This document shows positions 30,583 to 49,243 of a stretch of DNA of 64,000 nucleotides, piece by piece. The notes under the pieces were generated by a model, which worked only from the letters and a program-made list of their open reading frames with translations, was not told where the DNA came from and ran no database searches. Source of the DNA: Blastocladiella emersonii ATCC 22665. Lineage: Eukaryota > Fungi > Blastocladiomycota. The first letter of the stretch is position 1, and each line of letters begins with the position of its first letter. Both the position numbers and the translations under genes were made by a program. The stretch lies in the NCBI GenBank assembly GCA_025594325.1, contig JANHCV010000007.1, positions 1,953,171-2,017,170 of the forward strand, given 5' to 3'.

Positions 30583-33500
30583 ATGGCCGGCACCTCCCCG
30601 CGCCTCCCGCCGGCCTCGCCTGCCGCACCGGCGTCGACCGCCGATCCCGTCTCCCAGATCGCCGACAACGTCGCCGTCCCGCTCGTCGCGCCGCCGCCCG
30701 CCGACGACCGCGACCGCGATCATGCACCATCAAAGTCCGTCAACAGCAGCGCCGAGTCGCTCGTCGCCAAGCGCTCGGCCCCGACCGCTGCCGCTGCCGA
30801 TTCCGGCGCCGAGTCGGTCTCGCAGTCCACGTCGCCGATGCTCGCCGCCAACATCTTCTCGCGCCTGTGCGGCCCTTCTCGCCCTTGCTCCGTCCATGAA
30901 TCGCCCCGCTCACCCCACCTCGCACCCTCCACTAGCTGGTACTCGTGGTGCACCCCGCTGATGCGCGCCGGCTACCACCACCCGCTGCAGGAATCGGACC
31001 TGCTCCCGCTCGGCGAGCCCTTCGCCGCCGACCGCGCCCTCGCCACCTTCCTCGGCCACTTCCGCACCACCCTCGCCGCGTGGCAGACCAAGGTCGGCCT
31101 GCCCACCGCGACGGACCGCAACCCCGCCCTCCACGTCCCCGCGCCGCACCGCGTCCCGCTCGCCGTCATCCTGCGCGCCCTCTACCGCTCCTTCGGCACC
31201 ATGTGGGTCGTCGCCGGCGCCCTCAAGGTCCTCGGCGACGCGACCGCCCTGCTCATCCCCGTCTGCGTCGCCCGCATCGTCGCCATCCTGTCCGATTGCC
31301 AGGCCAGCTTCGCCCCCGCTGCCGCCGCCGACCAGCCTGAGCACTACTGCAACGCCAACGCCGGCTTCGTCACCGTCGCCCTCATGTTCGCGTGCCAGCT
31401 CGTCTCGAGCGTCTCGACCAACGCCTTCTGGCACCTGTCCATGTTCACCGGTCTGCGCGTCCGCACCGCCCTCGTCACCGCCATCTTCGACAAGGCCCTC
31501 AAGCTCAGCAACGCCGCCCGCGCCGCCGAGTGGAACGTCGGCAAGGTCGTCAACCTCGTCTCCACCGACTGCTCGCGCCTCAGCGACCAGGCCGTCCCCT
31601 TCTTCCACCAGCTCTGGACCTGCCCGCTCCAGGTCACCGTCGCCATGATCCTCATGGTCAACTACATTGGCTGGGCCGCCCTCGTCGGCTTCGGCTTCCT
31701 CGCCCTCTTCGTCCCGCTCCAGGGCCGCGCCATGGCCGCCATCGCCGTCATGCGCCGCAAGTCGCAGCGCATCACCGACCGCCGCGTCAAGCTCATCAAC
31801 GAGCTGCTCCAGGGCATCAAGATCGTCAAGCTGCTCGCCTGGGAGCGGCCCTTCCTCGCCAAGGTCGAGGCCGAGCGCGAAAAGGAGCTCTACTACGTGA
31901 CCCGCGTCGCTGTGTGGAAGTCGGCCGTCGTCGGCGTCGCCATCGCCGCGCCCGCCATCGCCGCCGTCTGCGCCTTCTCGACCTACGCCGCCTTCCACCC
32001 GCTCGTCCCCTCGCTCGTCTTCGGCTCGCTCTCGCTCCTCAACCTCGCCCGCATGCCGCTGTGGCAGATCCCGCAGGCCTACGCATACCTCCTCGACGCC
32101 CAGGTCGCGCTCCGCCGCATCACCAACCTGCTCGTCGCCGCCGAGTCCGAGGCCATGCCCACCGTCACCCGCTCCGACGACCCGAACCGCCCCGCCATCG
32201 CCATTGACGCCGCGTCCTTCACGTGGGAGCTCACCGGCGCCACCGGCCCGGTCCCTCCCGCGGCGCCCAGCTCGTCCGAGAAGGAGAAACTCGGCGCGAG
32301 CGACTCGGTCGTCGCGCTCCCGCTCCCGCTCCCGCTCCCGACCTCGTCCGCCGACGACGCTGTGTTCATCCGTGACCTCGACCTGCGCATCCCCAAGGGC
32401 GCGCTCGTTAGCGTCGTTGGAAAGGTGGGCTCCGGCAAGAGCTCCCTGCTCAGCGCCATGATCGGCGAGATGGAGCGCGTCGCCGGGTCGGTCGCCATTG
32501 ACGGCCGCGTTGCGTACTGCCCGCAGATCCCCTTCATCCTCAACGACACGCTGCGCGCCAACGTGACTTTCGGCGCGCCCTTTGACGAGGCCCGCTACAA
32601 CGACGCCATCTACTACAGCGCGCTGCACCGCGACCTCGCACAGCTGCCCGGCGGCGACGCGAGCGAGGTCGGCCAGCAGGGGCTCGTCCTGTCGGGCGGC
32701 CAGCGCGCCCGCACCACCCTCGCGCGCGCCCTCTTCGCCTCGCCGTCAATTCTTCTCGCCGACGATATTTTGGCCGCCCTGGACCAACATGTGGCTGCGT
32801 TCGTCTTCCACAAGTGCCTGCGCGGCCACCTCGCCGGCACCACGCGCGTCCTTGCGACACATAATTTGGCCTATGCGGCGCAGTGCGACTTGGTCCTTTA
32901 CCTGGAAGCCGGCCGCATTGTCGAGCGCGGCACCATCGACGAGATCATGGCCCGCGGCGGGGCGGCCGCCGACCTGTTCCGCGAGTACGCGCACGGCGGC
33001 GCCCAGGACGCCGTGACCGATGCGGGCGCGTCTCACGGCGCTGATTCCGACCCGGACCTCGAGCTCGAGGGCGCGCCGTCCGCTACCGCCCCCGCCCCCG
33101 CCGCGATCGCTCCCGCCGACGAGCAGTTCAACGGCGAGGCCAAGCGCACCGGCGCCACGCTCACGTCGACGGTCGCGGCCGCCGACACCCAGCGCGGCAA
33201 GGTGACGACAACCGAGGAGCGCGAGCTCGGCGCCGTACGCGCCGAATACTACTCGCGCTACGTGGCGTATGCGGGCGGGTGGCTCGTCGCGAGCCTGCTC
33301 ATCGCGTTCGTCGCCGTGACGCAGGGCGTGCGCATCGTCAACGACATTGCCCTCGTGTGGTGGGCCAACGACACGTTCGGCTGGACGCTCGACGCGTACA
33401 TTGGGTTCTACGTCGGCCTCGGCGTGACGCAGGCCGCCATCACGGTCGCGAGCAACGTTGTGTTTGTGTACTCGGGGGTCGTCGCGTCGCGTCACCTGCA

Positions 33501-35061
33501 CCAGGCCGCGGTCCGGCGTCTCGTCTACGCGCCGCTGTCGCTGTTCGAGGGCACGCCGCTCGGCCGCATCCTGAGTCGACTCAGCAAGGACGTGGACGTG
33601 ACCGATTACCTGCTCATCGACAGCTTCCGCATGGCGCTGCGCTCGCTGACGGTGCTGCTCTCGATCGTCGGCATCATGATCAGCGCAACGCCGTTTGTCG
33701 CGATCGTGGTCGGCGTCCTGCTATTCGTGTTCTATTACGTGCAGCGCTTCTACCGCGCCACCTCGCGCGAGCTCAAGCGGCTCGAGTCGCTCTCGCGGTC
33801 GCCGCTGTACGCCGAGGTCGGCCAGGCCATGGCCTCGACGGGTCTCGCAACGATCCGCGCCTTCGGCGAGCAGGACCGGTTCCGCGCCCGCGTCGCCCGC
33901 CACATGGACCGCAACAACCGGCCCTACTTCTTGTCGTTCACGGCGGCTCGCTGGCTCGGCGTGCGCATCGAGCTGCTCGGCGCCACCGTCACGACGGCGT
34001 GCGGCCTGTTCGCCGTCCTGTTCCGCACCTCCATCTCGCCGTCGCTCGTCGGGCTCACGCTCAGCTACGCCCTGCAGATGACCATGATCCTCAACAACAA
34101 CGTGTTCCAGATCGCGGAGGGCGAGAGCCAGATGAACAGCGTCGAACGGCTCGTGTACACAGCCACCAGCTCTCCACAAGAGCGCGGGACGCCCGGCGAC
34201 GTCGCGGACCGGGCTGCGCGCGGGGAACCGCCGCTCGACCTGGTCGCGGTGCCCGCCGAGTGGCCGTCGCGCGGCGAGATCGTCATCGACAACCTGCAGC
34301 TCGCGTACGGCAACGGGATCCCGGTACTGCGCGGCCTCACGATGCGCATCCCCGCGGGCGCACGCGTCGGGGTAGTCGGCCGCACAGGTGCGGGGAAATC
34401 GTCTTTGCTATCGGCGCTCCTGCGCATGGTGGAGCCGACGGGCGGGTCCGTGGTGATCGACGGCGTCGACGTGTCGCGCGTGTCGCTGCACGACCTGCGC
34501 TCGCGCATCGCCGTGATCCCGCAGGAGCCCGTGCTGTTCGAGGGCACCGTGCGCGAGAACATTGACCGGTACGGCGAGTACGACGACGCGGCCGTGTGGG
34601 ACGTGCTCGAGCGGGCGGGCCTGCGCGACACGGTGGCGGCGCTCGACGGGCGGCTCGACGCGTACGTTGGCGAGAATGGCGAGAACTGGAGCCTCGGCGA
34701 ACGCAGCTGCCTGTGCCTCGCGCGCGCCATGCTCGTTGCCCGTCGCATCGTCTGCATGGACGAGGCGAGCGCGGCAATCGACCTGGCGACCGAGCAGACG
34801 ATCCAGGAGTCCATCCGGTCCGGGTTCAAGGACGTGACGGTCTTCATCATCGCGCACCGCCTCAACACGGTCGTCGATAACATCGACTTTGTGGCGTACC
34901 TCGAGGGCGGCCGTGTCGCCGAGTTCGCCCCGCCGCACGAGCTGCTGCAGCGTCCCGACTCGCTGTTCCGCGCGCTCGTTGACGAGACGGGGCCCGCCAG
35001 CGCTCAGGTCCTGTACCGTATGGCGGCCGAGTCGTACGCGAAACGGAGGTCGTTCGATTGA
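30583..35061 (+). CDS. ABCC/MRP-family (Yor1-like, no TMD0) ABC transporter; probable in-frame intron 30867-30935
   Basis: TMD-NBD-TMD-NBD. NBD1 GKVGSGKS, LSGGQRAR, ILLADD; NBD2 GRTGAGKS, NWSLGE, CMDEASA. ELKRLESLSRSP and RWLGVRIE motifs. Removing the 69-nt GT-AG segment gives IFSRLWYSWCTPL. Confidence 0.93.
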   Translation: MAGTSPRLPPASPAAPASTADPVSQIADNVAVPLVAPPPADDRDRDHAPSKSVNSSAESLVAKRSAPTAAAADSGAESVSQSTSPMLAANIFSRLCGPSRPCSVHESPRSPHLAPSTSWYSWCTPLMRAGYHHPLQESDLLPLGEPFAADRALATFLGHFRTTLAAWQTKVGLPTATDRNPALHVPAPHRVPLAVILRALYRSFGTMWVVAGALKVLGDATALLIPVCVARIVAILSDCQASFAPAAAADQPEHYCNANAGFVTVALMFACQLVSSVSTNAFWHLSMFTGLRVRTALVTAIFDKALKLSNAARAAEWNVGKVVNLVSTDCSRLSDQAVPFFHQLWTCPLQVTVAMILMVNYIGWAALVGFGFLALFVPLQGRAMAAIAVMRRKSQRITDRRVKLINELLQGIKIVKLLAWERPFLAKVEAEREKELYYVTRVAVWKSAVVGVAIAAPAIAAVCAFSTYAAFHPLVPSLVFGSLSLLNLARMPLWQIPQAYAYLLDAQVALRRITNLLVAAESEAMPTVTRSDDPNRPAIAIDAASFTWELTGATGPVPPAAPSSSEKEKLGASDSVVALPLPLPLPTSSADDAVFIRDLDLRIPKGALVSVVGKVGSGKSSLLSAMIGEMERVAGSVAIDGRVAYCPQIPFILNDTLRANVTFGAPFDEARYNDAIYYSALHRDLAQLPGGDASEVGQQGLVLSGGQRARTTLARALFASPSILLADDILAALDQHVAAFVFHKCLRGHLAGTTRVLATHNLAYAAQCDLVLYLEAGRIVERGTIDEIMARGGAAADLFREYAHGGAQDAVTDAGASHGADSDPDLELEGAPSATAPAPAAIAPADEQFNGEAKRTGATLTSTVAAADTQRGKVTTTEERELGAVRAEYYSRYVAYAGGWLVASLLIAFVAVTQGVRIVNDIALVWWANDTFGWTLDAYIGFYVGLGVTQAAITVASNVVFVYSGVVASRHLHQAAVRRLVYAPLSLFEGTPLGRILSRLSKDVDVTDYLLIDSFRMALRSLTVLLSIVGIMISATPFVAIVVGVLLFVFYYVQRFYRATSRELKRLESLSRSPLYAEVGQAMASTGLATIRAFGEQDRFRARVARHMDRNNRPYFLSFTAARWLGVRIELLGATVTTACGLFAVLFRTSISPSLVGLTLSYALQMTMILNNNVFQIAEGESQMNSVERLVYTATSSPQERGTPGDVADRAARGEPPLDLVAVPAEWPSRGEIVIDNLQLAYGNGIPVLRGLTMRIPAGARVGVVGRTGAGKSSLLSALLRMVEPTGGSVVIDGVDVSRVSLHDLRSRIAVIPQEPVLFEGTVRENIDRYGEYDDAAVWDVLERAGLRDTVAALDGRLDAYVGENGENWSLGERSCLCLARAMLVARRIVCMDEASAAIDLATEQTIQESIRSGFKDVTVFIIAHRLNTVVDNIDFVAYLEGGRVAEFAPPHELLQRPDSLFRALVDETGPASAQVLYRMAAESYAKRRSFD

Positions 35062-35121
35062 TTGATGGCAGTAGTGAGAAAATAGCATCTGTATCATTAT
35101 CATTCGCGGCGTCAGCGTTTC

Positions 35122-35634: not shown

Positions 35635-35665
35635 CACGTGACGCAGTCACGCGACGCGTTGCGCC
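35635..35665 (+). promoter_or_regulatory. CACGTG plus GACGCGTTGCGCC (MCB-like core) upstream of the kinase
   Basis: Seen about 110 bp before ATG 35773. The same 13-mer with a neighbouring CACGTG occurs at 45376-45396. Function is inferred. Confidence 0.35.
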
Positions 35666-35772
35666 GCGCGCCGCGCCGCGCAGCAAACTTGCCGCCCTCC
35701 GCCTTCGCCTTCGCCTTGGGGCCGGAGCGTCTTCGCAGCCACCTCGACTTTTTGCACTCTGCCTTACCAACC

Positions 35773-37919
35773 ATGGAACTCGATGCACCCGTGAGGCGCG
35801 ACCGTGCGGACCCCGAGGTTGGGCGGGTCAAGGCGCTATATGATTTTGTGTGCGAGCTCGACCAGGGCGGGACCGGCACGGTCCACGAGACCAGATTCAA
35901 GGCGACGGGCAATCTCGTCGCGTTCAAGGTGATCAAGCGCAATCCCCCGCGTAACGCGTCGCAAATACGGTGGCAAACGCGGAACGAGCTCGCGGTCCTG
36001 GCGGCCGTCCGCCAGCACCAAGGCGGCGGCCATGGACACGTACGCCTATTGGCGCTTCTCACTGGGCCCCTGCCCCCGACTCGACTAACGCCTGTGGCCT
36101 TCCTCTCCCGCTACCGCTACCGCTACCGCTACCGCGCCCCACGTTCACGTCTACGTCCCTGTTTTCGACGCGCTCGTTCGCGCTCTGTAGCCAAACGTCG
36201 TCCAGGTGTGCGACGCGATCGTGACGCGGAGCAACGTCTACATTTTTCTCGAGCTGTACGTTTCCTGTGTCACGCCGCGTGTGCACCTCCGCTCCGCTGA
36301 CATTGTCCCGCGCAGTGCTCGTGGCCGGGATCTCTACCGTCGCGTCCAGAGGCCACGACTGGGCCCTTACTCGGAGTCTAGTTCCCGCCTGATCGCGTAC
36401 CAGCTGCTCCGCGCCCTCGAGTTCTTGCACGGAATGGGCATCGTGCACCGCGACATCAAGCCCGACAACATCCCCATTGAGGGCGATGCCGCTTCCGACG
36501 AGCCGTACGTCCGACTTGCCGACTTTGGGGTCGCTCACCACGGGGCGATCGGCGACCGGATGACGCTGGTGTGGTACGTTCCCCCCGCTCGTCAAGCGAT
36601 GCACGCGGCAAAGAAAGACCCTCGCTGACGCATGACGTGACCACACCACCCGCCCCTCCCTCCCTCCATCCCTTCCAGTGGCACCCTCGGCTACATGGCG
36701 CCGGAGGTCCTCCCTGCAAGCTTGACCACGAGCGCGGCCACGGAGCTTGAATACGGCGCGGCGGTCGACAGCTGGTCGCTTGGCGTCACCCTCTACTACC
36801 TCTTTCGAGGTGCTTACCCGTTCGAGTGCGGGAATGACCCGGTCGAGTGCGGGAAAGACCGCAAGGAGGACAAGTTTGCGCTTCGGGTTCTCACGACTGG
36901 TACTTGTGCTTTCGATTGCCTGCGCGAGACCGAGGCGGCTTGGTGGTCGACACGCCACCATCAGTTGCTCGAGCTCAAGTCGATGGTGTCGGGACTGCTG
37001 TGCGGCGACGCGAGTCAGCGGTACGTTGTTGCGCCTGACCACGGGCTACCGCGATGCGTTCGTCCGTTCGTCCGTTCGTCCGTTCGTCCGTTCGTTCGTT
37101 CTGACCATTGTCTCGTCGTTCATCGTCCCCGTCGTCTCCCTTTTTCGCGATACCTTTTGCTGCCTCGCGCATGCACGTAGGCTTACGATGACCGGCGCAC
37201 TCCAGCACCCGTGGATCGACTCGCATATCACCTCGCTGCGAGACACGTACGATGCCCTTACGCCTCACCGGAATACCTCTCATGTCGCACCACAGCAACT
37301 CGGCCGAGTCGCCGATGCCATCGCGGCGCTCCCCGCCGACGCTGACGCCGGCGATGCCGGCCAGGAGCTCTCTCATCTATCTCATGCGCTGCCGCCGCAT
37401 GGCCACCCGCTGCTCGTGCTGCCTGCGGGCGCGGCGCCCGCGGACGGCTTCATGGCCACGGCAGCGGTTGGAGGTGCGCCCGCCCTTGCGCCCGCCCTTG
37501 CACCGCTCGCGGACGCGACCACGGGCACGCCAGTGGAGGACGCTTCCACGTGGGCCGTGGTCTACGACTCGCAGTCGGGCAGCGCTATTGGGGTGGCTCC
37601 ACCGCCGCCTCCGCCCGTGGCGATTCCTGTCGAGGAAACGGCCATGACCACGACCACGACCGCGGACATTCCAATGGAGGAGGATGGTTCCACGTGGGCC
37701 GTGGTCGTCGATCCGCGCACGGGCCTTGATATCGCGGTGGCCCCAACTGCGGCGGCTCATGTCGAAGATGCGCCGTCGGCCAATTCGACCCCACGCCGGC
37801 ACGACCGTCGTGCTCCCGGACTCTCAGTCGAGCCAGCTTGGCTTGACGGCGGCACCTGCTTCTGGCCCCGTGATTCAGCGGTACTGGATGAAGTCGCGGG
37901 CGCCGATTCGCAAAAGTAG
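35773..37919 (+). CDS. Ser/Thr protein kinase, CAMK group; exons 35773-36039, 36191-36255, 36316-36573, 36679-37020, 37181-37919
   Basis: VAFKVI, RNELAVL, HPNVVQV, HRDIKPDN, LADFGVA, CGTLGYMAPE, VDSWSLGV, RLTMTGALQHPWI after removing four GTACG...AG introns. The Gly loop lacks its first Gly (ELDQGGTGTV). No FHA domain. Confidence 0.88.
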
Positions 37920-40832
37920 CCGGGCAACGTCGATACGCGCTTCCCGTGACGCGGCCGCGCAGTCGCCCCGACTTGTGGCGGCACAGCGGCCTCATGGAGG
38001 AGCGTCGCTTGCACCGCACCTAGGTCAGCAGCACCAAGTCCAGCACCAGCACCTTTCGCAGCACGCGCAGCAACCGTCTCCGCCCGACTTTTGGCTGGGC
38101 TCGATCCTCTCTGCCTCGCCGCCGCTCAGCAACGCAATGGGCTCGAGCTCGGCCAATCCGGGCGCGAAGTACGTCCAGGACCAGTCTGGCGGCGCCGGCG
38201 TGGCCTCGAACGTCTTCGCCGCCAGCCAAGCGTCCGTGGCAACGGGATTGGCGTGGGACCTGTCGCCGATTCAGCACGGCCCCGTCAGCAACAACGAGTT
38301 CTCGCTTGTGTTCGCGGGATCGACCTCGGCGGCTGCATCCACGCAGTTTGCCATGTCCGACCGTGACGCGCGCGCCGAGTAAAGAGCCCGCCCAAAACAA
38401 TGGGAAATACACTTGACCTTGCGTAACTTGCGGTGGGCAGTGAAGTGAGTGTACTGAGCGTTTCCTTCCTTCACGGCCCTTGTCCTGGAGACGCTGGCGG
38501 GCGATCAAATCCATTCGGGCATGAAGCTCAACCATGTTGTATTGCTGCAACGGTAAATACGGCTCGCGGTGGGCCTCACCACCTCACCCCTCAGTTGATG
38601 GACACCACACGAGCGCGAGATCTTTCAAGAATGCTGTTGCGATGATGGAACGCGGGGAGCTCGCACTGCATACCACGCCGTCCTCGACGCGACCCGTGTC
38701 CGCCAATCGCGCGAGGCCGCGGGACCACGACGCGAGGCCGAGGAACAAAAGTGCAAACAAACAAACTCGGGCGCAAGGTTTTGGCGAATCCGCGCGCAAA
38801 GCCGCCGCCGGGCGAGAGCCGGAGGTCGCACGACGAGCTGCAGTCGTTGGAGCAGCAGCTCTCCGGATGCCGGGAGACCGACCGACACGGCTTATTTACT
38901 TACCAGACACGCAGTGCCAGCACGAAGATAAACCCGATGCCGGGGCACACAAGCGACAAGCTTGACCGTCGCGACGTGGGAAGCCACACAGCGGTCGGCG
39001 ATTTGGCGATGGATTCGACCAGCACGTTGGGCAAGGAAGCAGCGAGAGGGGGACCACAGCCAATTCGTGAAGCAGCTTGTCGTGCGTGCGCGGCGACAAG
39101 TCCGGGTGATCGCGCGCGCGGTGCGAGGCCCAATCGACTTGGACTGGGAGGAAAGTAAGTGAGCTGGAGGCAGATAGACAGCGACTCAACGCACGGCGCG
39201 TCGTGGAGGACGAGGCGGAGCAGCTTCCGCGGTGCACGCGGGGTGGTCGCAGGCGCCTCGAGGTACGGCCGGGTCGTCGGCAACGGCCCGATCCGCGAGG
39301 GCAAAGTCGATGGCAGCAAGGCGAGCGAGGAGAACGCCAGCCGCAGTCCTCCTGGTTGAGGCGAACAAGCGGTTTGCTGTGCTGCCGGGCGGATGCCGTC
39401 CGAGTGCGAGTGCGAGCGCGACGCGTCGCTGTCGCTGTCGCTGCAGAGAAGACGAGAGGTGGCGACGTGTCCGACGCCGGCTCAAGAAAACAAGTGGCGC
39501 GCCCGCGGCGAGAATCGCATCTAGACCGTCGAGACCGTCGAGACCGTCGAGACCGTGTGGCAGGCAGGGCGCGGATGCAGCGCAGGTGCGACAAAGTTGA
39601 CGCAGTGGCATGATGTTTCATGGGGTGGTGCGGCGGCATCATGATACATTGGGTCATACATTGGCGCTTTGCGGGGGAGCGGGGATCGCGTGCGGCGGAC
39701 GAGCGCCTCTTGTACCGCCGCCGCCGCCACCTCGCTGCCGTCGCTCGCCAGGCACAACAGCACCGCGGCCCGGGGAGGCTTGGGACTGACGGCCGTTGAC
39801 ATAAAATAGAAGTTGAAAGGCTGGTCGCTGGGCGAGCGCCTCGAGACCGCGCAGGCGGCGAGCCCTGACGCACTTGGTCACGCACCGCGCCGCTCGCCGC
39901 GGTGATGCTCGGCGACCATGAGACCGTCGCCGTCTCGCGCGCGCGCGCGGGAGCCGCCGTTCGGGAGCGTGAGCAGCAGCGGTTGCGGCCAAGGTGCGGC
40001 TCGACCAGGGCGACGCGGCCGCGGGAGATCGACGTGGCCTTGGCGAGTACACGGCGCTGCGACGTGAGACACGAGAACTTGGCCTCAGGGCGTCGGTCGC
40101 CATGACGAACTCGCAGGCCGAGTGGTGGCCGCCGCGGGCGAACCGGGCGAGCAGGGTGTCGCGCACCGCGGCGCCGCGGATGCCCCTTGACCCGGACCAG
40201 CTGCTCTGGCCGTTGACGAGCGAGCTTTCGACGCCGCGGTCGCGCATGGCGCGTATGGCGCGCGAGATCGTGAGCGAATTGAATGATCGAGCCAAGGAAG
40301 GCGCGAGGGTCGCGGGGAGACAGTTTTGTCTCCGGCGCCCGGGCTCACGTGGTGGCGCGACGCCGGGAGACACGAGCCGGTCGCTCGCACGGCGATCGCC
40401 CCCTCGGAGTCCCGGATCCGTCCCGCAGGAGTGCTCCCGCCAAGCGCGCGCCCGCGCAAAACAAGCTGCCAGCCAGCCCCTGATCCGCCTGCCCTGCCAC
40501 CGAGCCTGGAAGCTGCCGCGCCGCGCCACGCCGCGACCCGCCGCCGCTGCCGCCGCCCTTCCCCTCCTCCGCCTCTCCCTCCCGAGCGAGCTGCACCAAG
40601 CTACTGCCGCCACTAGCGGCACCACCGAGCCACTGCCTGTACACGGCGCACCACCACCACCACCAGCAGCAGCAGCCGCCGCCGCTCCAGCGCGACGACA
40701 AGGGTATGCGTGCGGCGCTGCCCCAGCGATTCCACGTGTGCTGACGCTTCTCGTCTCCCTCCTCCCTCCTCCCGCGTCTAGTCGCCCTCCGTTTCTCGAC
40801 CCCACAACTGCTGCCTGCCAACTACCTGCGCC

Positions 40833-43694
40833 ATGGCGTACGTCCCGTGCATCGTGATCCTGCTGGCGGTCCTCCGAGCTCGGAAGACGCCCGACGACGA
40901 CCACGCCTTTGAGGACCAGCTGATCGCCTGCCTCGACAAGCTCGGTTCGGAGCTCGCCGACGAGAAGGTGCCGACGGTGATCGCGCTGCTCGACTCGCAC
41001 GCGATCCTCATCATCGCCGACTTCTACGCCGCGGGCCTCCACCTCCCCGTGCTCGCCACGGCCCGCGACGCGGCTGCCGCCGAGCGCGCCATCTCGACGT
41101 GGTACGGTGGCGCGCTCAAGCACATCAAGGACCTGCCCGACCAGAACAGCCTCCGCCAGACGCTGCTCGTGTGGGTCCGCGAGATGGCCGAGGTGCACTT
41201 CAGCATCTCGGCTGACGCTGCGCGCGGCGCGGGTACCAGTGCCGGCGGCGCCGACGCTCCCGGCGCGACGACAAGCTCATCGCCGACCTCGCCGACGCCC
41301 ACATCTACGATCCGCGCCGTCGTCGTCGACATCTGGCACCGGCTCGCCAAGCTGGCCTCGTCCGCGCCCCATCTCTCCGAGACGCAGCGGGAACAGGCCG
41401 CGCTCAAGTGCCTCGCCGACGCCGGGCCCTACCTGAACAACGACGCGGCCATCTGCGCCATGCACGACCGCGCCGTTCTTCGGCACTCGACCTTCTACCG
41501 CGAGCCCTCGGAGACGCTTGCGCTCATCGCCGGCTTCGACCTCTCCACCGCCTTCCCTCAACCCAGCATTGCCCTCGAGCTGGTCCTCGACGGCAAGCCC
41601 GACTGGCGCGATCCCAATTTCCAGCTCGCCCGTCTCTACCTCTTCGTCAAGACGTGGATGGGCGCTGCTGACGTGTTTCGCGACCGTGCCGACGAGGGCG
41701 CCGCCGCCGTCACGCGGGACCGCGCCGCCGCCCACTTAAACGCGGCCTGCGTGCTCGCTCCGACGTGGGAGAAGGCCCACCACTTCACGGCCGAGTTCTA
41801 CTACTCCTGGGCCGCCATCAACGCCGAGGGCAACACCGAGAAGCTCATGCAGACCATCAGCCCGAACGCGCCCGACTTTTTCGACCGCCTCGCGCGCCTC
41901 GAGCGATACTTTGCCTTCTGCGGTCGGTCGCTCCTCCTCGGCTCCCGGTACGCCGACCAGTCGGTCCCGGTCCTGCTCCAGCGGTGGATGGACCTGGCCG
42001 ACCCCGACCCCAACCACAACCCCACGCCCGTGATCGTGCCGTCCCTCGACCCGTCCCTCGATGGCGACGGCGTCACCGAACAGCGGCTCGAGGCCTTCCA
42101 CCGCGTCCATCCGCACGTGCGCGCCGCCGTCACGCGTGCCCCGGCGGACACCTTTGAGCCGTGCATCGAGCTGCTCGTGTCGCGCCTGACCCACGGCCAG
42201 AGCGTGGTCTTCAACCTCATCAAGCCCACGCTCGTACGCTCCTTCAAGGCGTACCCCGAGGGCCAGTCGTTCTGGAAGTTTGTCGCCTCGCTCTTCTCGC
42301 TCGACGACTTCCGGCGCATCCGCGCTGAGGAAGTGCTGCACGCCGTGTGGGCCGCCGACGACTCCGAGGACAAGCAGCTCACGCTGCTGACCAAGACCAT
42401 CATGGCCATCTCCAAGCAGCTCACCACCATCGCCGCCAAGGAGCACTCCAAGGATCGCGCGGGTTCCTTCCTGCTCAGCGTCACCCACCGCCGCTTCACC
42501 AAGGTCATCCCGATCGACGCCGCGGCCATGGCCAACGGGGCTGTGCTGCTGAACCGCTGCAACGTGGTCGTCCCGACGGCCGAGCTGATCACGCCCACCC
42601 TGCCGGGCGGCCCGCACTCGTCGCAGTCGCAGGCCCGCAGCCCGTACGCGACGCCCGACTTCCTGCGTGCGGCCGATGACGAGTACGAGGTCATCTCGAC
42701 CATGTCGAGGCCCCGCAAAATTGCATTTCGCGGCGGCAGCGGCACCACGTACACGTTTCTGATCAAGGGCGTCGACGACCCGCGCAAGGACGCGCTCGTC
42801 ATGCGTGTCGCGCAGGCCATCAACCGCATCCTGTCGCGCAGCGCGGTCGCACGCGGCACTCACCTGCGCATGCACGACTACGCCGTGATCCCGCTCAGCG
42901 ACGTCACCGGCATGTTCGAGTGGATCGCGACGCCGACCGTCGCGCTCCGCGAGGCGATCGTCAGCCAGTACGTGTCTGCGCTCCGCGCCAGTCTTCCCGC
43001 CAACCCTCATCCGTCGGGCAGCGCGGAGCAACTCGCCGAGTTCGAGAGACGGGTCCGCGCGCACGCGCCGGCGCGTTTCGGCGAGTGGTTCGACAAGGAG
43101 TTCTCGTGCCCCGCGGCTGCGCGCCAGGCGTTTCTCCAGTCGACGGCCGTCAGCAGCATGGTCGGCTACCTCCTCGGCATCGGCGACCGCCACCTCGGCA
43201 ACATCCTCGTCAGCAGGCTCACGGGCGAGGCGATGCACATCGACTTCGGCATTATGTTCAAGGAGGGCAAGCGGTTCAGCACGTGGCCCGAGCAGATGCC
43301 GGTTCGCTTGACGCAGAACCTTGTGCAGGCGCTCGGCGGCGTGGAAGAGGGGTCCGTGTTTCGGCGCGTGTTCGAGTCGGTGCTCGAGGTGTGCCACAAG
43401 AACGCCGAGTTGATTCTCGCGGCCGTCGATCCCATCCGCCACGACCCCATCGCCAACTGGCGGCCCAGCGTCGAGGAGGTGGGCGACGACGGCAAAACCA
43501 AGAAGCGCGTGCGCGTCATCTCCAGCAAGTCGACGAGGGTGGCGGTCAAGCGGGGCTGCCGCGAGTACCACAAGATCGAGTTGCGTTTGGCCAAGTGCCA
43601 CGCGCCGGAAGCGCAGGTGGACAAGCTGATTCGGAAGTCGACGGACCCGGAGCGGCTGGCGCGCGGTATCCGCGGACTCGAGGCATGGTATTGA
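40833..43694 (+). CDS. Truncated ATR/Mec1-like PIKK (partial FAT + kinase + degenerate FATC)
   Basis: WEKAHHFTAEFY, YADQSVPVLLQRWMD, VSRLTH, IKGVDDPRKD, GYLLGIGDRHLGNILV, MHIDFG, PEQMPVRLTQNL, HDPIANW, QVDKLIRKSTDPERL. A possible upstream intron at about 40704-40781 means the true start may lie further 5'. Confidence 0.85.
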   Translation: MAYVPCIVILLAVLRARKTPDDDHAFEDQLIACLDKLGSELADEKVPTVIALLDSHAILIIADFYAAGLHLPVLATARDAAAAERAISTWYGGALKHIKDLPDQNSLRQTLLVWVREMAEVHFSISADAARGAGTSAGGADAPGATTSSSPTSPTPTSTIRAVVVDIWHRLAKLASSAPHLSETQREQAALKCLADAGPYLNNDAAICAMHDRAVLRHSTFYREPSETLALIAGFDLSTAFPQPSIALELVLDGKPDWRDPNFQLARLYLFVKTWMGAADVFRDRADEGAAAVTRDRAAAHLNAACVLAPTWEKAHHFTAEFYYSWAAINAEGNTEKLMQTISPNAPDFFDRLARLERYFAFCGRSLLLGSRYADQSVPVLLQRWMDLADPDPNHNPTPVIVPSLDPSLDGDGVTEQRLEAFHRVHPHVRAAVTRAPADTFEPCIELLVSRLTHGQSVVFNLIKPTLVRSFKAYPEGQSFWKFVASLFSLDDFRRIRAEEVLHAVWAADDSEDKQLTLLTKTIMAISKQLTTIAAKEHSKDRAGSFLLSVTHRRFTKVIPIDAAAMANGAVLLNRCNVVVPTAELITPTLPGGPHSSQSQARSPYATPDFLRAADDEYEVISTMSRPRKIAFRGGSGTTYTFLIKGVDDPRKDALVMRVAQAINRILSRSAVARGTHLRMHDYAVIPLSDVTGMFEWIATPTVALREAIVSQYVSALRASLPANPHPSGSAEQLAEFERRVRAHAPARFGEWFDKEFSCPAAARQAFLQSTAVSSMVGYLLGIGDRHLGNILVSRLTGEAMHIDFGIMFKEGKRFSTWPEQMPVRLTQNLVQALGGVEEGSVFRRVFESVLEVCHKNAELILAAVDPIRHDPIANWRPSVEEVGDDGKTKKRVRVISSKSTRVAVKRGCREYHKIELRLAKCHAPEAQVDKLIRKSTDPERLARGIRGLEAWY

Positions 43695-44466
43695 GTCGCG
43701 CGAGGGGATGCGGGGATGCGGGGATGCGGGGATGAAGAGAACGGACAGGGACGGACGGCAATACACCATTGATCTGCCAATCCATCAACTCTCGTTGGGT
43801 CCACTCGGTCCGCGCTCAGAAGCAAGAGGAGCAGCAGGCAGTGCCCGTGAGGCAGTGCCCGTGAGGCAGACGCCATGTGCAACGGCCGGCGAAGCAGCGG
43901 CCGCGAGCGGAGCTGGTAGAGAGAGAGGGTCGAGAGGGCCGAGTCGCAGGCAACGGATGCCGCCGCGCGGTGCTAGATAGATCTCAGCAGCGGGCGGCTC
44001 GTCGCGCACCAAGTCAAGTGCGGACGGACGCCGCACGGCGGGGAAGCTCACGCTCGGATGACGGTCGCAGGGCGCCGCCGACGCCGGCGCGCGCCGGCCG
44101 GGCTCGGCAGACGACGGGTGTGTTCTGAGATGGCGACTCCATCATCGATTATCGCATGCTCAAGTGTTCCATGGTTGCTCTACTCCATATTAATGCGTGT
44201 TGAGGCGAAGGGCGAAGAGAGAGAGAGCGAGAAGGCCTCCGAGGCGACCGGCGGGCCGTTGAGCCGCAGCGAGCGCCCAGGCGAGCGCCTCGCCCCGGTC
44301 GTTCACCAAGCATTGACCCCGACTCCTCGTCGACGCAGCACGGAGGACCCAACTCCATGCAACGAGGCCTCCTGTGCCGCGCCTGCCGTTCCGCGCGTGC
44401 CGTTTCGTCCGTGGTCCTCAACTCGCACAGCCCGTCGTGAGCGCGCTCCAGCGGCGGCACCACTCT

Positions 44467-44550
44467 CGAGCCCACTCGCGAGCCCACTCGCGAGCCCACT
44501 CGCGAGCCCACTCGCGAGCCCACTCGCGAGCCCACTCGCGAGCCCACTCG
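44467..44550. repeat. Minisatellite (CGAGCCCACTCG)x7
   Basis: Seven perfect 12-bp units counted directly. Confidence 0.95.
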
Positions 44551-45375
44551 CTTACCCTGACCTTGGCCGCTTGAGCGAGTGAGAGGCCTCAATTTGTCCG
44601 CGGTGAGTGAATCGCACACGCACGGGACCCTCGCGGTCGCTCGACTGGTTTTGCGATCAGCGGCACGCCACGCCGATCGCGCCCTCGGCCTCCTCCCTCC
44701 GCGCGCTCGCCGGCTGCCCCCTCCGCTCCCGCCTCCTCCCGCTTGCCCTGCGACTATACGCACGAAAACAACCGGACTCGGTTGCCTCGCTGTTGCAATG
44801 GATCAAGACAAGTTCAATTCCCTTCGGGCCCGCCTCGAAACGCAGGTGAAGAAGAAGACGGCCATCGCGCACGCCGTGGCGAGCGCAGCCAGCGCGCCGT
44901 TGGAGGAGAACACCTTGGTGCGGCCGCCGCAAGATGCGACTCGTGCACGCGCTACGGCGCCGCAGCCCGCTCACGGCAGTGCTGGCGACGGCCAGGGCGC
45001 ACAGCAGCAGCCGACGCCCCAGTGAGCTGGCCTGCCTGCATCGGGCAGCATCGCGAAGGGTGAGTGGTACGCGACTGCTGCAACCAGCTGCAACTCGAAC
45101 GAAGCCACCCTACTGACCGCACAGGCTTGATCGCGCCCGTCATCATCATCATCATCATCATCATCCCTCAGCTCGCAAGCGCCGTTGCTCATCCCGCACC
45201 CGGCCGATCCCCTCGCGCGCGCTGGCTGTCGTGGCCGCACGGCATGTGTTGCTCGATGAAATGCACCATCTTGTTTCCTCGAACCGTGGCCGCTCGCTCG
45301 CTCGCTCGTTGGCTGAAGGGTCCGTCCGCTCGCACGTGAGCGCCGAGAGCGCAAGGATCGGCGCCAGGCCAACGT

Positions 45376-45396
45376 GACGCGTTGCGCCACCACGTG
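45376..45396 (+). promoter_or_regulatory. GACGCGTTGCGCC plus CACGTG upstream of the BRCT gene
   Basis: Identical 13-mer to 35653-35665, about 140 bp before ATG 45525. Function is inferred. Confidence 0.35.
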
Positions 45397-45524
45397 GGGA
45401 GCGCGTCCAACCCGAAACTCTTTGCGGCGAAGTCGGCGAAGACCGCTCTCCCCCCTCAGTCAATGTGTGGAAGTGGAATAGCTGGGGAGCCCACTCGATG
45501 CATCTTGCACCTCGCGCTGCGAAC

Positions 45525-46820
45525 ATGAAGCCTAATGCAAAACCGACGACGGCTCAGGCCGCGACCGCCGCCGCGGCGCCCGGCCGCGCCCGCCCCTACT
45601 CCGACGCATTCGCCTCTCTGGTTCCGGACGCGGACCAGGAACAATACCATGGTCACGGCGACGCCGTCGATCCCACGGCATCCAAGCGGCGCAGGCGTAA
45701 GCGCCGTGCCGGCGCTCGCAGCCCAGAGCCCGCGCCCGCCGCGCCTGCCGCTGCGGCGCACGTACTCGCAGCACCAGCTGTCGCACCTGGTCCCGCGCCA
45801 GAGCCTGATGCCATGGACTTGGACCCGCAGCCTGCCGTCTGCGATGCGCCGCCCAGGTCGGTCGCGACGCGGTTCCGAGTCGCGCTTGTGGGCTTCCCGC
45901 CGGAATCCGCCGCGCGCTACGCACGAGATACGTATTCTTCTGGATCGTCGTCTCCTGCTCCCTCGGCGTGGGCCGAAATCGACGCTTCGCGCGCCTTCTA
46001 TTTTTTTTTCCGCCCTCTTGCCTTTCCAGCAGCACCTGAAGCTAACGTGCCCTCCGCCGCGCCTTGCCCCACAGATGGAGCACATTGGCGGCGTTCTCGT
46101 GCATTTGGATGACGAATGGAATCACGCTTACATTACCCACGTCATTGCCGCACTGCCGATTCCATCCGCCGCGTGCCTCTGCGCCGTGGCCGCCCAAGTT
46201 TGGCTCCTGACGCCCCAGTACCTCGACACATCGACCGCCGCGGGCTACTTTGTCGGCGAGTCGCCTTTTGCCTGGTCCGCACTTTCTCGTAAGGAGCTCG
46301 CCGCCGTCGCCACCGAACACGCCTTCAAAGCTGCCCTGTCGCACGCGCCAGTCTCGGCCACATTCAAGATTCAGAACCTGTCCATGGACACGGCTGCAGG
46401 TGCGTCAGCGCATTTCCTGGGTGGCCGTTTTCGACTCTTGGATGAGCTGACATGGCTCGAGCTGTTACTGTAGCCATGTCCGACATTGTGGGTCGGATCA
46501 CCGCCGCTTCCAAACACTGGGGCGTGTCCATCAACGGCGCTGGTGCGGGTCCAAGCGCTCGCAAGGGACCCTACGAGGGCCTGCGGCTTGTGGTGCTCAC
46601 CGACTCGGCCACTGCAGACGTCGAATACCGCCGCCAGCTCACCGCCGGGGGTGCAACCGTTGCCAACGAGTGGGCGCAGGGCGCCATCGACATGATCCTG
46701 CGGCACAACCGCGCGCTCCCCGACGAGCTCGGCGGGATCAGATCGGCGCGGAACCGCACTTGCGTTGCGTCGGCCTTCGCAACTTCCGCCCTTTTCGCCA
46801 GCAGCGGGTGGCCTGCGTAA
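45525..46820 (+). CDS. Tandem-BRCT protein resembling TopBP1 BRCT7-8; intron 46400-46473, first splice junction unresolved
   Basis: RFRVALVGF...HIGGVLV..ITHVIAAL..CAVAAQVWLLTPQYLDTSTAAGYFVGESPF, then AASKHW...GPYEGLRLVVL..EYRRQLTAGGATV. Intron GTGCGT...CTGAC...TAG restores frame. The putative intron 45932-46074 is one phase off, so a frameshift or other exon is possible. The 3' end may extend to about 47026. Confidence 0.65.
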
Positions 46821-48776: not shown

Positions 48777-49243
48777 AGACTTGCGTGCTCGTGTGCGCGC
48801 GTGCGCCACGATGGCGCGGCGGGGACGCTGGCCGCCCCCCGCCCGGTCCAGCCAGCCCGCCGCCCGCCGACTTAGACACATGAATTCAACTCCCAAAAAC
48901 AATAATTCTTGTTTATCACTGAATCGTGATCAGGGACCCTCGGGAACCCCAGAAATGCAAAAATCCCCGAGTCAAAGCATGGGGGTGTTGAGATCGTGTT
49001 CGGGCGCGCCGAGGCGAAAAAGTTTTTCACTCGCGGCCGTCGCGACGAGCTCGCGGCGCGGGTGGGCAATTCAAGCACGTAACGCTCAATCTGGCAGCTC
49101 CCGACCTGTCTCGGATCTGGCTCAAACTTTGCACGTAATCTTCTGATATATCATGAAATATTTTAGACTAGTGGGCATAATTTTACGGCGTCGTTTGACG
49201 GCCCTGCACGCATCGGGGGTGGTTAGTTCACGTACGTATTCGA
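48777..49243. repeat. Second copy of the ~460-bp repeat 'A'
   Basis: Highly similar to 4413-4876; runs directly into copy 2 of the long block. Confidence 0.85.

What the first reader, a model, noticed from the sequence alone, without database searches (positions are those of the whole stretch)
35773..46820. Co-oriented kinase / mini-ATR / TopBP1-like BRCT trio: a possible clustered DNA-damage checkpoint module
Seen: three consecutive plus-strand genes within 11 kb encode a CAMK-type kinase, a PIKK with ATR-diagnostic motifs, and a tandem BRCT pair resembling TopBP1 BRCT7-8. Established: TopBP1/Dpb11/Rad4 activates ATR/Mec1, which signals through CAMK-group Chk kinases, and these genes are normally unlinked and much longer. 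Inference: all three are short, divergent paralogs next to repeat-rich DNA, so they may form a lineage-specific or mobilised miniature checkpoint, decoy or defence module.
Basis: partly seen in the sequence, partly recalled or inferred. Interest (0 to 1): 0.75.

Follow-up and report, generated by a model that had tools for sequence, protein, structure and literature searches.

The report
Clustered truncated ATR, Chk2, TopBP1 paralogs
Near a chromosome-arm end of the water mould-like fungus Blastocladiella emersonii, three neighbouring genes are shortened, fast-evolving extra copies of the three core DNA-damage checkpoint genes (ATR, a Chk2-type kinase, TopBP1), which sit full-length on three other contigs; such a linked "mini-pathway" has not been described, but whether the genes are expressed or work together is untested.

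Summary
The window is the last 64 kb of contig 19 of Blastocladiella emersonii ATCC 22665.

The three consecutive plus-strand genes at 35773-46820 are each the nearest paralog of a canonical checkpoint gene elsewhere in the same genome:
- **Kinase:** a 5-exon kinase whose closest relative is the FHA-kinase (Chk2/Rad53 type) on contig 21. All four kinase-domain introns are shared and the FHA domain is absent.
- **PIKK:** a 953-codon intronless ORF, colinear with the FAT-kinase-FATC end of the 2149-aa ATR on contig 1. It sits inside the Blastocladiomycota ATR clade on a 7-10x longer branch.
- **BRCT gene:** a tandem BRCT pair paralogous to the C-terminal BRCT7/8-like pair of the TopBP1-like gene on contig 18. 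It shares two intron positions with that gene, one of them a rare AT-AC intron.

All three keep the 3' (C-terminal) module and lack the N-terminal recruitment modules. Both kinases keep their catalytic motifs. The BRCT pair has lost the Ser and Lys that read phosphate.

Catenaria keeps the neighbouring CHD-ABC block but has no trio beside it.

Joint function is inferred from this non-random linkage only. No RNA data were available, and a co-folding test gave no answer. The kinase and BRCT genes also show eroded codon bias. The scan's other notes cover this same stretch only.

The parts
35773..37919 (+). FHA-less Chk2/Rad53-type kinase paralog. Five exons: 35773-36039, 36191-36255, 36316-36573, 36679-37020, 37181-37919. 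The product is 556 aa. The 3' end is uncertain: the NCBI model continues to about 38382 in another frame.
   Evidence: Pfam Pkinase hits on the exons. Splice sites were read from the DNA. The model is in frame with no internal stop. The nearest own-genome paralog is C21:1069873-1070268, at 84 bits against 44 or less for any other kinase. Identity is 38% and 32%, and the FHA exon has no match in the window. All 4 introns share position and phase with the contig-21 gene. VAIK-Lys, alphaC-Glu, HRD, DFG and APE motifs are present, read from the translations.
40833..43694 (+). Mini-ATR: a 953-codon open frame encoding most of FAT, the kinase domain and a degenerate FATC only. The NCBI model H9P43_006584 (985 aa) adds two small 5' exons from about 40.64 kb.
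   Evidence: It aligns colinearly with residues 1060-1909 of the contig-1 ATR open frame at 29% identity, E 1e-91. There is no N-terminal ATR similarity elsewhere in the window. It falls inside the Blastocladiomycota ATR clade at 99/100 support, with a branch of 4.2 against 0.4-0.6. GC3 is 0.91 and codon usage is host-like.
42750..43463 (+). PI3/PI4-kinase catalytic domain of the mini-ATR (aa 640-877). The ATP-binding Lys, DRHxxN and DFG motifs are kept.
   Evidence: Pfam 1.1e-42. Motifs were read in the BLAST alignment against the canonical ATR.
42114..42377 (+). HEAT_ATR (ATR-type FAT-proximal repeats), aa 428-515 of the mini-ATR.
   Evidence: Pfam PF23593 at 30.2 bits, cut-off 27. The own genome has only two other matches, in the ATR on contig 1 and in a 2368-aa open frame on contig 5 that I take to be TOR from its length only.
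45525..46820 (+). Stand-alone TopBP1 BRCT7/8-like tandem BRCT gene. Exon 1 is 45525-45927 (basic, low-complexity tail plus beta1-alpha1 of BRCT-a). The AT-AC intron is 45928-46072. Exon 2 is 46073-46399. The GT-AG intron is 46400-46473. Exon 3 is 46474-46820. The product is 358 aa. The NCBI model H9P43_006585 (223 aa) starts at 46075 and lacks exon 1.
   Evidence: PDB TopBP1 BRCT7/8, 8.6e-7. Paralog on contig 18 at 39% and 35% identity. Junction DNA of both paralogs. Local tblastn at 7e-20 and 2e-8. In frame with no stop under the AT-AC model. The positions equivalent to TopBP1 S1273 and K1317 are Val and Ala.
35635..35666 (+). CACGTG plus ACGCGT-containing 13-mer upstream of the kinase. The same 13-mer lies at 45376 upstream of the BRCT gene.
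   Evidence: The motif is not specific: its 11-mer core recurs at 3298, 30168 and 52510 and in other loci, and CACGTG/ACGCGT pairs are generally enriched.
30514..35061 (+). ABC transporter (context). It is the last gene of a CHD-ABC block that is conserved in Catenaria, and the trio begins about 700 bp after it.
   Evidence: Pfam. Catenaria locus L041 has CHD(-)...ABC(+) but no kinase, PIKK or BRCT match within 10 kb downstream.
49213..53497 (.). 4.3-kb repeat (context). A second copy at 1-4283 is 99.7% identical. The family lies mostly near contig ends.

Best explanation
SHOWN. The three genes are partial, DNA-level duplicates of three B. emersonii genes that lie on three other contigs: the ATR gene, the Chk2/Rad53-type FHA-kinase gene and the TopBP1-type BRCT scaffold gene.
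- Each duplicate keeps only the 3' half: the catalytic FAT-kinase-FATC core, the kinase domain, or the last BRCT pair.
- Each has lost the N-terminal part that ties the canonical protein to damage sensors: the HEAT solenoid that binds ATRIP, the FHA domain with the N-terminal region ahead of the kinase domain, or the N-terminal BRCT pairs.
- They lie head-to-tail within 11 kb, at the edge of a conserved CHD-ABC block, in repeat-rich contig-end DNA.
- They are single-copy.
- No copy was found at the syntenic Catenaria locus. No short ATR was found among the Catenaria, Allomyces or B. britannica proteins in the searched collections.

INFERRED. Linkage of paralogs of three direct partners cannot be chance, so the set was assembled or kept because the products act on one another.
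- The mini-ATR is an active apical kinase that cannot be recruited through ATRIP/RPA.
- The BRCT pair no longer reads phosphopeptides. It serves as the mini-ATR's adaptor or multimerising activator, as the AAD-BRCT7&8 unit of TopBP1 does for ATR.
- The FHA-less kinase is the effector.
- Together they would form an auxiliary, sensor-independent branch of ATR-type signalling.

MY ODDS. Paralogy and architecture about 0.9. Some joint function, now or in the past, about 0.55. This particular active-cascade wiring about 0.35.
For: Organism and gene identities.

Mini-ATR:
- Pfam and PDB matches.
- Colinear with the ATR C-terminus.
- The canonical ATR has M-HEAT, FAT, HEAT_ATR, kinase and FATC domains.
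- The nearest proteins among 1.8 billion representatives are the blastoclad ATRs, in the order B. emersonii, B. britannica, Catenaria, Allomyces.
- Tree support 99/100 for placement in that clade.
- Intact 953-codon ORF with GC3 0.91.

Kinase:
- Nearest paralog is the FHA-kinase on contig 21.
- 4 of 4 introns conserved.
- Catalytic motifs intact.

BRCT gene:
- TopBP1 BRCT7/8 is the best PDB hit for both the window copy and the contig-18 copy.
- Paralogy and shared introns.
- The contig-18 gene has N-terminal twin-BRCT pairs.

Open reading frames:
- 556 and 358 stop-free codons where about 12 and about 8 stops are expected at this GC content (plus arithmetic).

Lineage specificity at the locus.

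Literature:
- BRCT7&8 is needed for the AAD to multimerise and activate ATR, while BRCT0-2 only recruits (PMC9257406).
- S1273A and K1317M abolish phosphoserine binding (PMC13440399).
Against: - No expression data: no RNA run was listed.
- The kinase and BRCT genes have eroded codon bias (GC3 0.74-0.79 against 0.93-0.97 in their parents and 0.91 in the mini-ATR). This fits weak selection or decay.
- The BRCT pair lacks both phosphate-binding residues, and no AAD-like similarity was detectable in its tail.
- The mini-ATR FATC is below Pfam's cut-off.
- Co-folding gave no answer.
- The shared promoter motif is not specific to these genes.
- No ortholog is available to measure selection.
- The timing of the duplication is unresolved: a polytomy, basal to the blastoclad ATRs.
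Confidence: 0.5

Rival explanations
1. Relic or by-product. The three partial duplicates accumulated in duplication-prone contig-end DNA. Only the mini-ATR is still maintained, for a function of its own. The kinase and BRCT genes are drifting toward pseudogenes, and there is no present-day joint function.
For: - GC3 is 0.74-0.79 and the codon log-likelihood is near zero for the kinase and BRCT genes, against 0.91 and 0.51 for the mini-ATR.
- The phosphate-binding residues of the BRCT pair are lost.
- The cluster lies between copies of a repeat family found near contig ends.
- A retroelement lies nearby.
- No relative carries the set.
Against: - All exons, splice sites (including a rare AT-AC intron) and catalytic motifs of the kinase are intact at only 32-38% identity to the parent. 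That is not expected after long neutral drift.
- Random duplication does not explain why exactly three direct partners of one pathway lie adjacent and co-oriented.
Confidence: 0.25
2. Decoy or damper. The truncated proteins act on the canonical pathway rather than as their own cascade, for example by titrating substrates, activators or partners of ATR, TopBP1 and Chk2. This would tune or silence checkpoint signalling at particular life-cycle stages, such as the rapid synchronous nuclear divisions or sporulation.
For: - All three lack the recruitment modules but keep the modules that contact partners.
- The BRCT pair cannot read phosphate, as expected of a non-signalling competitor.
- BRCT7&8 mediates TopBP1 multimerisation (PMC9257406), so a free pair could poison multimers.
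Against: Both kinases keep every catalytic residue, which a pure decoy does not need. There is no expression or interaction data.
Confidence: 0.15
3. Captured cargo. A mobile element or virus picked up 3' fragments of the three host genes, evolved them rapidly, and was later fixed or endogenised here.
For: - All three are 3' fragments, co-oriented and tightly spaced.
- They are very fast-evolving (branch 4.2-5.3).
- They are absent from relatives.
- They lie beside repeats and a reverse-transcriptase ORF.
Against: - No transposase, helicase or viral hallmark lies between or beside the three genes.
- No relative was found in IMG/VR.
- Introns are retained with host-type splice signals.
- GC content and mini-ATR codon usage are host-like.
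- The flanking 4.3-kb repeat is a dispersed contig-end family, not a pair of element termini specific to the trio.
Confidence: 0.07

Closest known systems
ATR/Mec1/Rad3 (canonical; here H9P43_001269 on contig 1, 2149 aa)
   Same: The FAT, HEAT_ATR, PI3K-type kinase and FATC order is the same, and the catalytic Lys, DRHxxN and DFG motifs are kept. The mini-ATR falls inside the Blastocladiomycota ATR clade.
   Different: It lacks the whole N- and M-HEAT solenoid (about 1150 aa), and so the ATRIP-binding region. The FATC is degenerate. The branch is 7-10x longer. It is a second copy beside a full-length ATR.
TopBP1 BRCT7/8 and the engineered minimal activator AAD-BRCT7&8 ('Junior', PMC9257406)
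   Same: It is a tandem BRCT pair whose best structural-database match is TopBP1 BRCT7/8, preceded by a disordered tail with a basic patch. It is a paralog of the C-terminal pair of the genome's TopBP1-like gene.
   Different: It is stand-alone, with no BRCT0-6. The S1273 and K1317 equivalents are Val and Ala, so canonical phosphopeptide reading is unlikely. No AAD could be recognised.
Chk2/Rad53/Cds1 FHA-kinases (here the contig-21 gene)
   Same: The kinase domain is its nearest paralog, with 4 of 4 shared intron positions, CAMK-group affinities and intact catalytic motifs.
   Different: It has no FHA domain and no N-terminal region ahead of the kinase domain. Instead it has a roughly 230-aa low-complexity C-terminal tail with a duplicated peptide motif.
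Rozella allomycis 934-aa ATR-like protein (EPZ33635.1)
   Same: It is an annotated natural protein with only FAT, HEAT_ATR, kinase and FATC. Its gene is 3.1 kb with no room upstream for HEAT repeats.
   Different: It is not sister to the mini-ATR. It has no kinase or BRCT neighbours. Whether Rozella also has a long ATR was not tested.
mTOR-deltaN (FAT-kinase 'FATKIN' crystallisation constructs, e.g. 4JSN)
   Same: It shows that a PIKK reduced to FAT-kinase-FATC can fold, and from my own knowledge be active. Its size is similar, about 1170 aa (listed).
   Different: It is an engineered fragment of TOR, not a natural gene and not ATR.

Membership tests
ATR subfamily of PIKKs | PI3K/PI4K-type catalytic domain with the ATP-binding Lys, DRHxxN and DFG motifs | tested here: met
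   Pfam PF00454 at 1e-42. Motifs are aligned to the canonical ATR.
ATR subfamily of PIKKs | ATR-specific FAT-proximal repeats and placement within the ATR clade | tested here: met
   PF23593 at 30.2 bits, cut-off 27. Human ATR is the best PDB hit by 22 orders of magnitude. Tree support is 99/100.
ATR subfamily of PIKKs | FATC domain | tested here: inconclusive
   PF02260 scores 21 bits against a cut-off of 25.3. The tail aligns to the canonical FATC but the terminal motif is altered.
ATR subfamily of PIKKs | N-terminal and middle HEAT solenoid (ATRIP-binding, UME/M-HEAT) | tested here: not met
   The ORF starts about 70 aa into the FAT domain. There is no similarity to the ATR N-terminus anywhere in the window.
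Chk2/Rad53/Cds1 kinases | CAMK-group Ser/Thr kinase domain with catalytic motifs | tested here: met
Chk2/Rad53/Cds1 kinases | FHA domain N-terminal to the kinase | tested here: not met
   The FHA exon of the contig-21 gene has no match in the window. A genome-wide FHA scan gives no hit in the window. Only about 700 bp separate the ABC stop codon from the kinase ATG.
Chk2/Rad53/Cds1 kinases | Common descent with the genome's FHA-kinase | tested here: met
   It is the nearest paralog by a wide margin. Four of four intron positions and phases are shared.
TopBP1/Dpb11/Rad4 scaffolds | C-terminal tandem BRCT pair of the BRCT7/8 type | tested here: met
   PDB phmmer gives 8.6e-7 with both repeats colinear. 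It is a paralog of the contig-18 C-terminal pair. Pfam BRCT models do not reach significance on the window copy.
TopBP1/Dpb11/Rad4 scaffolds | N-terminal BRCT pairs (BRCT0-2 and the twin-BRCT type) for recruitment | tested here: not met
   The gene spans only 1.3 kb. The N-terminal exon is a low-complexity tail. The contig-18 gene has these pairs.
TopBP1/Dpb11/Rad4 scaffolds | Phosphate-binding Ser (S1273) and Lys (K1317) in BRCT7 | tested here: not met
   The alignment to TopBP1 puts Ala at K1317. The beta1-loop reads V-G where the contig-18 copy has S-G. The role of these residues is from PMC13440399.
TopBP1/Dpb11/Rad4 scaffolds | ATR-activation domain (AAD) | tested here: inconclusive
   AADs are short and poorly conserved. 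Only low-complexity alignments were found between the N-terminal tail and the contig-18 protein.

The most novel reading that the evidence does not exclude
A naturally evolved, genetically linked 'minimal checkpoint cassette'. In this reading a sensor-less ATR core, a non-phospho-reading BRCT7/8 adaptor and an FHA-less Chk2-type effector were assembled by partial duplication from three chromosomes. They were then kept together as a unit because they signal to each other independently of RPA/ATRIP/9-1-1. They might respond to a different cue, such as telomere or subtelomere state or a life-cycle transition, or act as a selfish or protective module.
Probability: 0.25. Interest if true: 0.85.

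Novelty: new variant of a known kind. Interest (0 to 1): 0.72.

Why it matters
Signalling pathways in eukaryotes are almost never encoded as gene clusters, and ATR, TopBP1 and Chk2 are textbook examples of large, unlinked, single-copy genes.

A natural set of their bare catalytic and adaptor cores, linked within 11 kb, would be useful in three ways:
- It would be an experiment of nature on which parts of ATR, TopBP1 and Chk2 suffice for signalling. It parallels the engineered mTOR-deltaN and TopBP1 'Junior'.
- It would be a case study of how a pathway can be duplicated and rewired piecemeal.
- It would offer small, tractable proteins for biochemistry and structure work on ATR activation.

If the kinase and BRCT genes prove to be decaying, the locus still documents how contig-end DNA collects and erodes partial paralogs.

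The work also corrects three public gene models: an ABC-kinase chimera, and a missed first exon behind an AT-AC intron.

Tried and rejected
- **PIKK as the 3' end of a normal ATR: rejected.** There is no ATR N-terminal similarity in the window, and a full-length ATR lies on contig 1.
- **Expression: could not be tested.** The look-up of sequencing runs listed no RNA run.
- **Complex prediction:** mini-ATR residues 230-953 with the database BRCT protein P0160 gave 'no answer'. This is neither for nor against binding.
- **AlphaFold2 of P0160 without an alignment:** mean pLDDT 34.5, unusable, so no fold search was done.
- **Pfam does not see the BRCT repeats of the window copy**. Identification rests on phmmer against the PDB and on own-genome paralogy.
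- **First word-based protein search of the PIKK:** it returned only the protein itself, probably swamped by low-complexity words. The exhaustive representative search replaced it.
- **Synteny through B. britannica:** it failed because the best ABC match there is only 43% identical on a 7.8-kb contig. Catenaria was used instead.
- **Shared 13-bp upstream motif plus CACGTG:** it is present, but its core and the CACGTG/ACGCGT pairing recur at other promoters, including the ABC gene and unrelated loci. It is therefore not evidence of trio-specific co-regulation.
- **AAD-like homology between the BRCT gene's tail and the contig-18 protein:** only low-complexity matches.
- **Viral origin:** no relative in IMG/VR.
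- **U12 and U6atac snRNAs:** not found. This search is weak and does not show absence.
- **Telomere repeat (AAACCT)n of the genome paper:** absent from the window, so 'subtelomeric' is inferred from the repeat family's position near contig ends.
- **Rozella's short ATR as a relative of the mini-ATR: rejected** by the tree.
- **Spliced models:** all searches were made exon by exon or with proteins returned by the database (P0160, P0161). Exons were concatenated only inside one script to count codons, stops and GC3.
Full report
**Source and context.** The PIKK open frame is identical to NCBI protein H9P43_006584 of Blastocladiella emersonii ATCC 22665. The window is G000:C19:1953171-2017170, the last 64 kb of a 2,017,170-bp contig in a 32.65-Mb, 21-contig assembly. 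This is the PacBio HiFi assembly of PMC9730499, which was annotated with funannotate. That paper mentions neither ATR nor checkpoints. GC content is 62-73% over most of the window. The neighbouring genes are ordinary:
- a myosin-chitin synthase (16728-20807, minus strand);
- a CHD remodeller (21679-28068, minus strand);
- an ABC transporter (30514-35061, plus strand);
- a reverse-transcriptase/RNase H ORF (55157-60346, minus strand).

**The PIKK.**
- The frame 40833-43694 encodes 953 aa. Pfam gives PI3_PI4_kinase (1e-42), HEAT_ATR (30.2 bits, cut-off 27) and a sub-threshold FATC.
- Human ATR is the best solved-structure match at 9e-57. ATM and TOR score about 1e-34.
- The genome holds a canonical ATR on contig 1, H9P43_001269 of 2149 aa. 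Its last exon alone is 1913 aa and carries M-HEAT_ATR, FAT, HEAT_ATR, kinase and a strong FATC.
- The window protein aligns colinearly with residues 1060-1909 of that exon at 29% identity, E 1e-91. The ATP-binding Lys, DRHxxN and DFG motifs are conserved.
- Nothing else in the window resembles the ATR N-terminus. The gene is therefore a FAT-kinase-FATC-only second ATR, not the tail of a long one.
- In an exhaustive search of 1.84 billion representatives, the best hits after itself are the ATRs of B. emersonii, B. britannica, Catenaria and Allomyces, in that order. No other short relative ranks between them.
- A maximum-likelihood tree puts it inside the Blastocladiomycota ATR clade with ultrafast bootstrap 99 and SH-aLRT 100. 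Its terminal branch is 4.2 substitutions per site against 0.4-0.6 for the canonical genes. Its exact position in the clade is unresolved, or basal to the canonical blastoclad ATRs.
- Its codon usage is that of well-maintained host genes: GC3 0.91 and a log-likelihood of 0.51 per codon, against 0.54 for the ABC gene.

**The kinase.**
- Reading the DNA gives five exons with canonical GT-AG introns in consistent phase and a 556-aa product.
- The Gly-loop (first Gly replaced by Asp), VAIK Lys, alphaC Glu, HRD, DFG, APE and the C-lobe Asp and Arg are all present.
- Single exons hit Rad53, PDK1, CaMK1, MNK, SnRK2 and PhK-gamma in the PDB. That places it in the CAMK-type group with no specific assignment.
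- The decisive result is the own-genome search. The exon 2-3 frame matches C21:1069873-1070268 at 84 bits. The next best kinase scores 44 bits.
- The contig-21 gene has an FHA domain directly upstream of the kinase domain. That is the Rad53/Chk2/Cds1 architecture.
- Identity is 38% for exons 2-3 and 32% for exon 4.
- All four introns that interrupt the kinase domain lie at the same codon and in the same phase in both genes. The copy was therefore made from DNA, not from mRNA.
- The FHA exon has no counterpart in the window. Only about 700 bp separate the ABC stop codon from the kinase ATG.
- A second, more distant FHA-kinase lies on contig 3.
- The public model H9P43_006583 (1808 aa) fuses the ABC transporter to parts of this kinase and skips kinase exons 1 and 4. 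I treat it as an annotation chimera.

**The BRCT gene.**
- Pfam finds nothing.
- phmmer against the PDB gives TopBP1 BRCT7/8 as the top hit for exon 2 (2e-5) and for the database protein H9P43_006585 = P0160 (8.6e-7). In the latter, both BRCT repeats align in order. The next hits are KKT4, SLF1 and MCPH1.
- P0160 starts at the Met at 46075, which aligns with residue 25 of the BRCT7/8 construct (7cmz chain numbering). The first strand and helix of the fold are therefore missing from the public model.
- They are encoded upstream, in the frame that starts at the ATG at 45525.
- The own genome has one paralog, at C18:1103749-1104353 (39% and 35% identity; 8e-14 and 3e-6).
- That paralog is the C-terminal BRCT pair of a long gene with N-terminal twin-BRCT pairs and a long disordered middle. 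Its BRCT exon also hits TopBP1 BRCT7/8 best (1e-10). I call this gene TopBP1-like on the strength of that architecture.
- In both paralogs the first BRCT exon cannot be joined to the second in frame by any GT-AG intron. In both, an AT-AC intron does it and gives the expected spacing. The 5' sequence is ATACGTA, which is the local GTACGT donor with A in place of G. The intron ends in AC.
- The second intron is GT-AG in phase 1 in both copies.
- The model is then 45525-45927, 46073-46399 and 46474-46820, giving 358 aa with no stop.
- The contig-18 copy keeps the S-G of the beta1 loop and the Lys aligned with TopBP1 K1317. The window copy has V-G and Ala at these positions.
- S1273A and K1317M abolish phosphoserine binding in human TopBP1 (PMC13440399). 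Canonical phosphopeptide reading is therefore unlikely for the window copy.

**What the three have in common.**
- Each is the nearest paralog of a canonical checkpoint gene on a different contig (contigs 21, 1 and 18).
- Each retains the 3' part of its parent and lacks the 5' part.
- Each is 30-40% identical to its parent.
- Each is single-copy.
- They are consecutive genes on one strand (locus tags 006583-006585), with intergenic gaps of about 2.9 kb and 1.8 kb. A codon-usage scan finds no further gene in those gaps.
- With roughly 10,000 genes in the genome (PMC9730499), adjacency of paralogs of three direct partners is not a chance event. This is reasoning, not a computed value.

**Age and place.**
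- In Catenaria anguillulae the ortholog of the ABC gene again lies downstream of a minus-strand CHD gene that is 64% identical to the window's CHD. The 10 kb beyond it hold no match to any exon of the trio.
- The Allomyces locus shows neither CHD nor the trio.
- The trio therefore sits exactly where conserved microsynteny ends.
- A 4.3-kb repeat occurs at 1-4283 and again, 99.7% identical, at 49213-53497. Its other copies lie mostly within about 50 kb of contig ends on contigs 2, 5, 6, 11, 17, 18 and 21.
- No telomere repeat is present in the window. 'Subtelomeric' is therefore an inference.

**Signs of unequal constraint.** The canonical ATR, FHA-kinase and TopBP1-like exons have GC3 of 0.93-0.97. 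The mini-ATR has 0.91. The kinase has 0.75-0.79 and the BRCT gene 0.74, with codon log-likelihoods near zero. Even so, the two weaker genes have 556 and 358 stop-free codons where about 12 and 8 stops would be expected at this base composition. They also have intact splice signals. They have been under protein-level constraint for most of their history, but may be weakly expressed or recently relaxed.

**Function.** Nothing here measures it.
- No RNA run was listed.
- Co-folding of the mini-ATR core with P0160 gave 'no answer'.
- The promoter motif noted by another first-stage note exists. It is a common promoter feature in this genome.
- The literature makes a joint role plausible. In Xenopus extract the AAD plus BRCT7&8 is the part of TopBP1 that activates ATR. 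BRCT7&8 acts by multimerising the AAD, and BRCT0-2 serves only for recruitment (PMC9257406).
- My preferred reading is an auxiliary ATR-type branch uncoupled from the usual sensors.
- The main rivals are a decaying relic set, a damper of the canonical pathway, and cargo of a mobile element. For the last of these I found no positive sign.

**Comparison with known proteins.** Short ATR-like entries exist in databases.
- The Rozella allomycis protein (934 aa; FAT, HEAT_ATR, kinase, FATC) is encoded by a 3.1-kb gene with no room upstream for HEAT repeats. It is not sister to the mini-ATR and has no kinase or BRCT neighbours.
- The Phytophthora 'PIK-L4' model spans 9 kb for 979 aa and is probably an under-called long gene.
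- I found no paper describing a truncated ATR paralog or a linked checkpoint-paralog set. The library searched is limited.

- Spliced models were searched exon by exon by reference, or through proteins that the database returned. The joined step was left out of all searches and folds. Exons were concatenated only inside one script to count codons, stops and GC3.
- No reads tool was used on the window.

Noticed in passing
window 45928-46072; L039 (G000:C18:1099000-1108999) minus strand, between the FRIAISGL and IQQLGGEF exons: Both the window BRCT gene and the TopBP1-like gene on contig 18 need an AT-AC intron (5' ATACGTA ... AC 3') at the same position to join the first BRCT exon in frame. The public annotation missed the exon in the window copy. 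U12 and U6atac snRNA searches of the genome found nothing, so it may be a U2-type AT-AC intron.
   Followed up: partly
window 30514-38382: NCBI model H9P43_006583 (1808 aa) is a chimera of the ABC transporter and the kinase. It reads past the ABC stop codon and skips kinase exons 1 and 4.
   Followed up: yes
window 1-4283 and 49213-53497; also 4413-4871 = 48778-49234 (96%): A 4.3-kb non-coding-looking repeat occurs twice at 99.7% identity, 49.2 kb apart. Its other copies (81-97% identical) lie mostly near the ends of contigs 2, 5, 6, 11, 17, 18 and 21, which marks it as a subtelomere-associated family.
   Followed up: partly
window 35635-35666, 45333-45396, 40346-40363; L039:9960-9982; L040:6727-6753: CACGTG lies within 30 bp of ACGCGT (an MluI-box-like motif) upstream of the kinase and BRCT genes, and also upstream of the canonical TopBP1-like and FHA-kinase genes. 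Such pairs occur 4 times in the window against 0.9 expected, and in unrelated loci too, so this is probably a general promoter architecture.
   Followed up: partly
window 37560-37830: The kinase's C-terminal tail carries two copies of a roughly 22-aa peptide (ED-A/G-STWAVV-x-D ... IGVAP/IAVAP) in otherwise low-complexity sequence. It may be a docking motif.
   Followed up: no
L041 (Catenaria anguillulae MCFL01000028.1:157934-183294) against window 21679-35061: CHD (minus strand) followed by ABC transporter (plus strand) is conserved microsynteny between B. emersonii and Catenaria. In the ATR tree B. britannica groups with Catenaria rather than with B. emersonii.
   Followed up: partly
G000:C3:1351213-1352178: A second FHA-plus-kinase gene lies here. 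It is much more distant from the window kinase than the contig-21 gene, and could be a Mek1- or Dun1-type paralog.
   Followed up: no
window 55157-60346 (minus strand): A 1730-aa RT/RNase H ORF has strong host-like codon usage (score 760 over 1459 codons). No endonuclease or integrase was seen by Pfam.
   Followed up: no
window 44460-44551 and 37057-37101: A perfect-looking 12-bp tandem array (7.7 copies) lies between the PIKK and BRCT genes. An 8-bp array (5.6 copies) lies inside kinase intron 4.
   Followed up: no
window 62001-64000: The last 2 kb of the contig drop to 52% GC, against 62-73% elsewhere, and carry no telomere repeat.
   Followed up: no
L043 (Rozella allomycis KE561047.1:127099-146169): Rozella allomycis encodes a 934-aa ATR-like protein with FAT, HEAT_ATR, kinase and FATC only, in a compact 3.1-kb gene. 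This is an independent natural N-terminally short ATR.
   Followed up: partly
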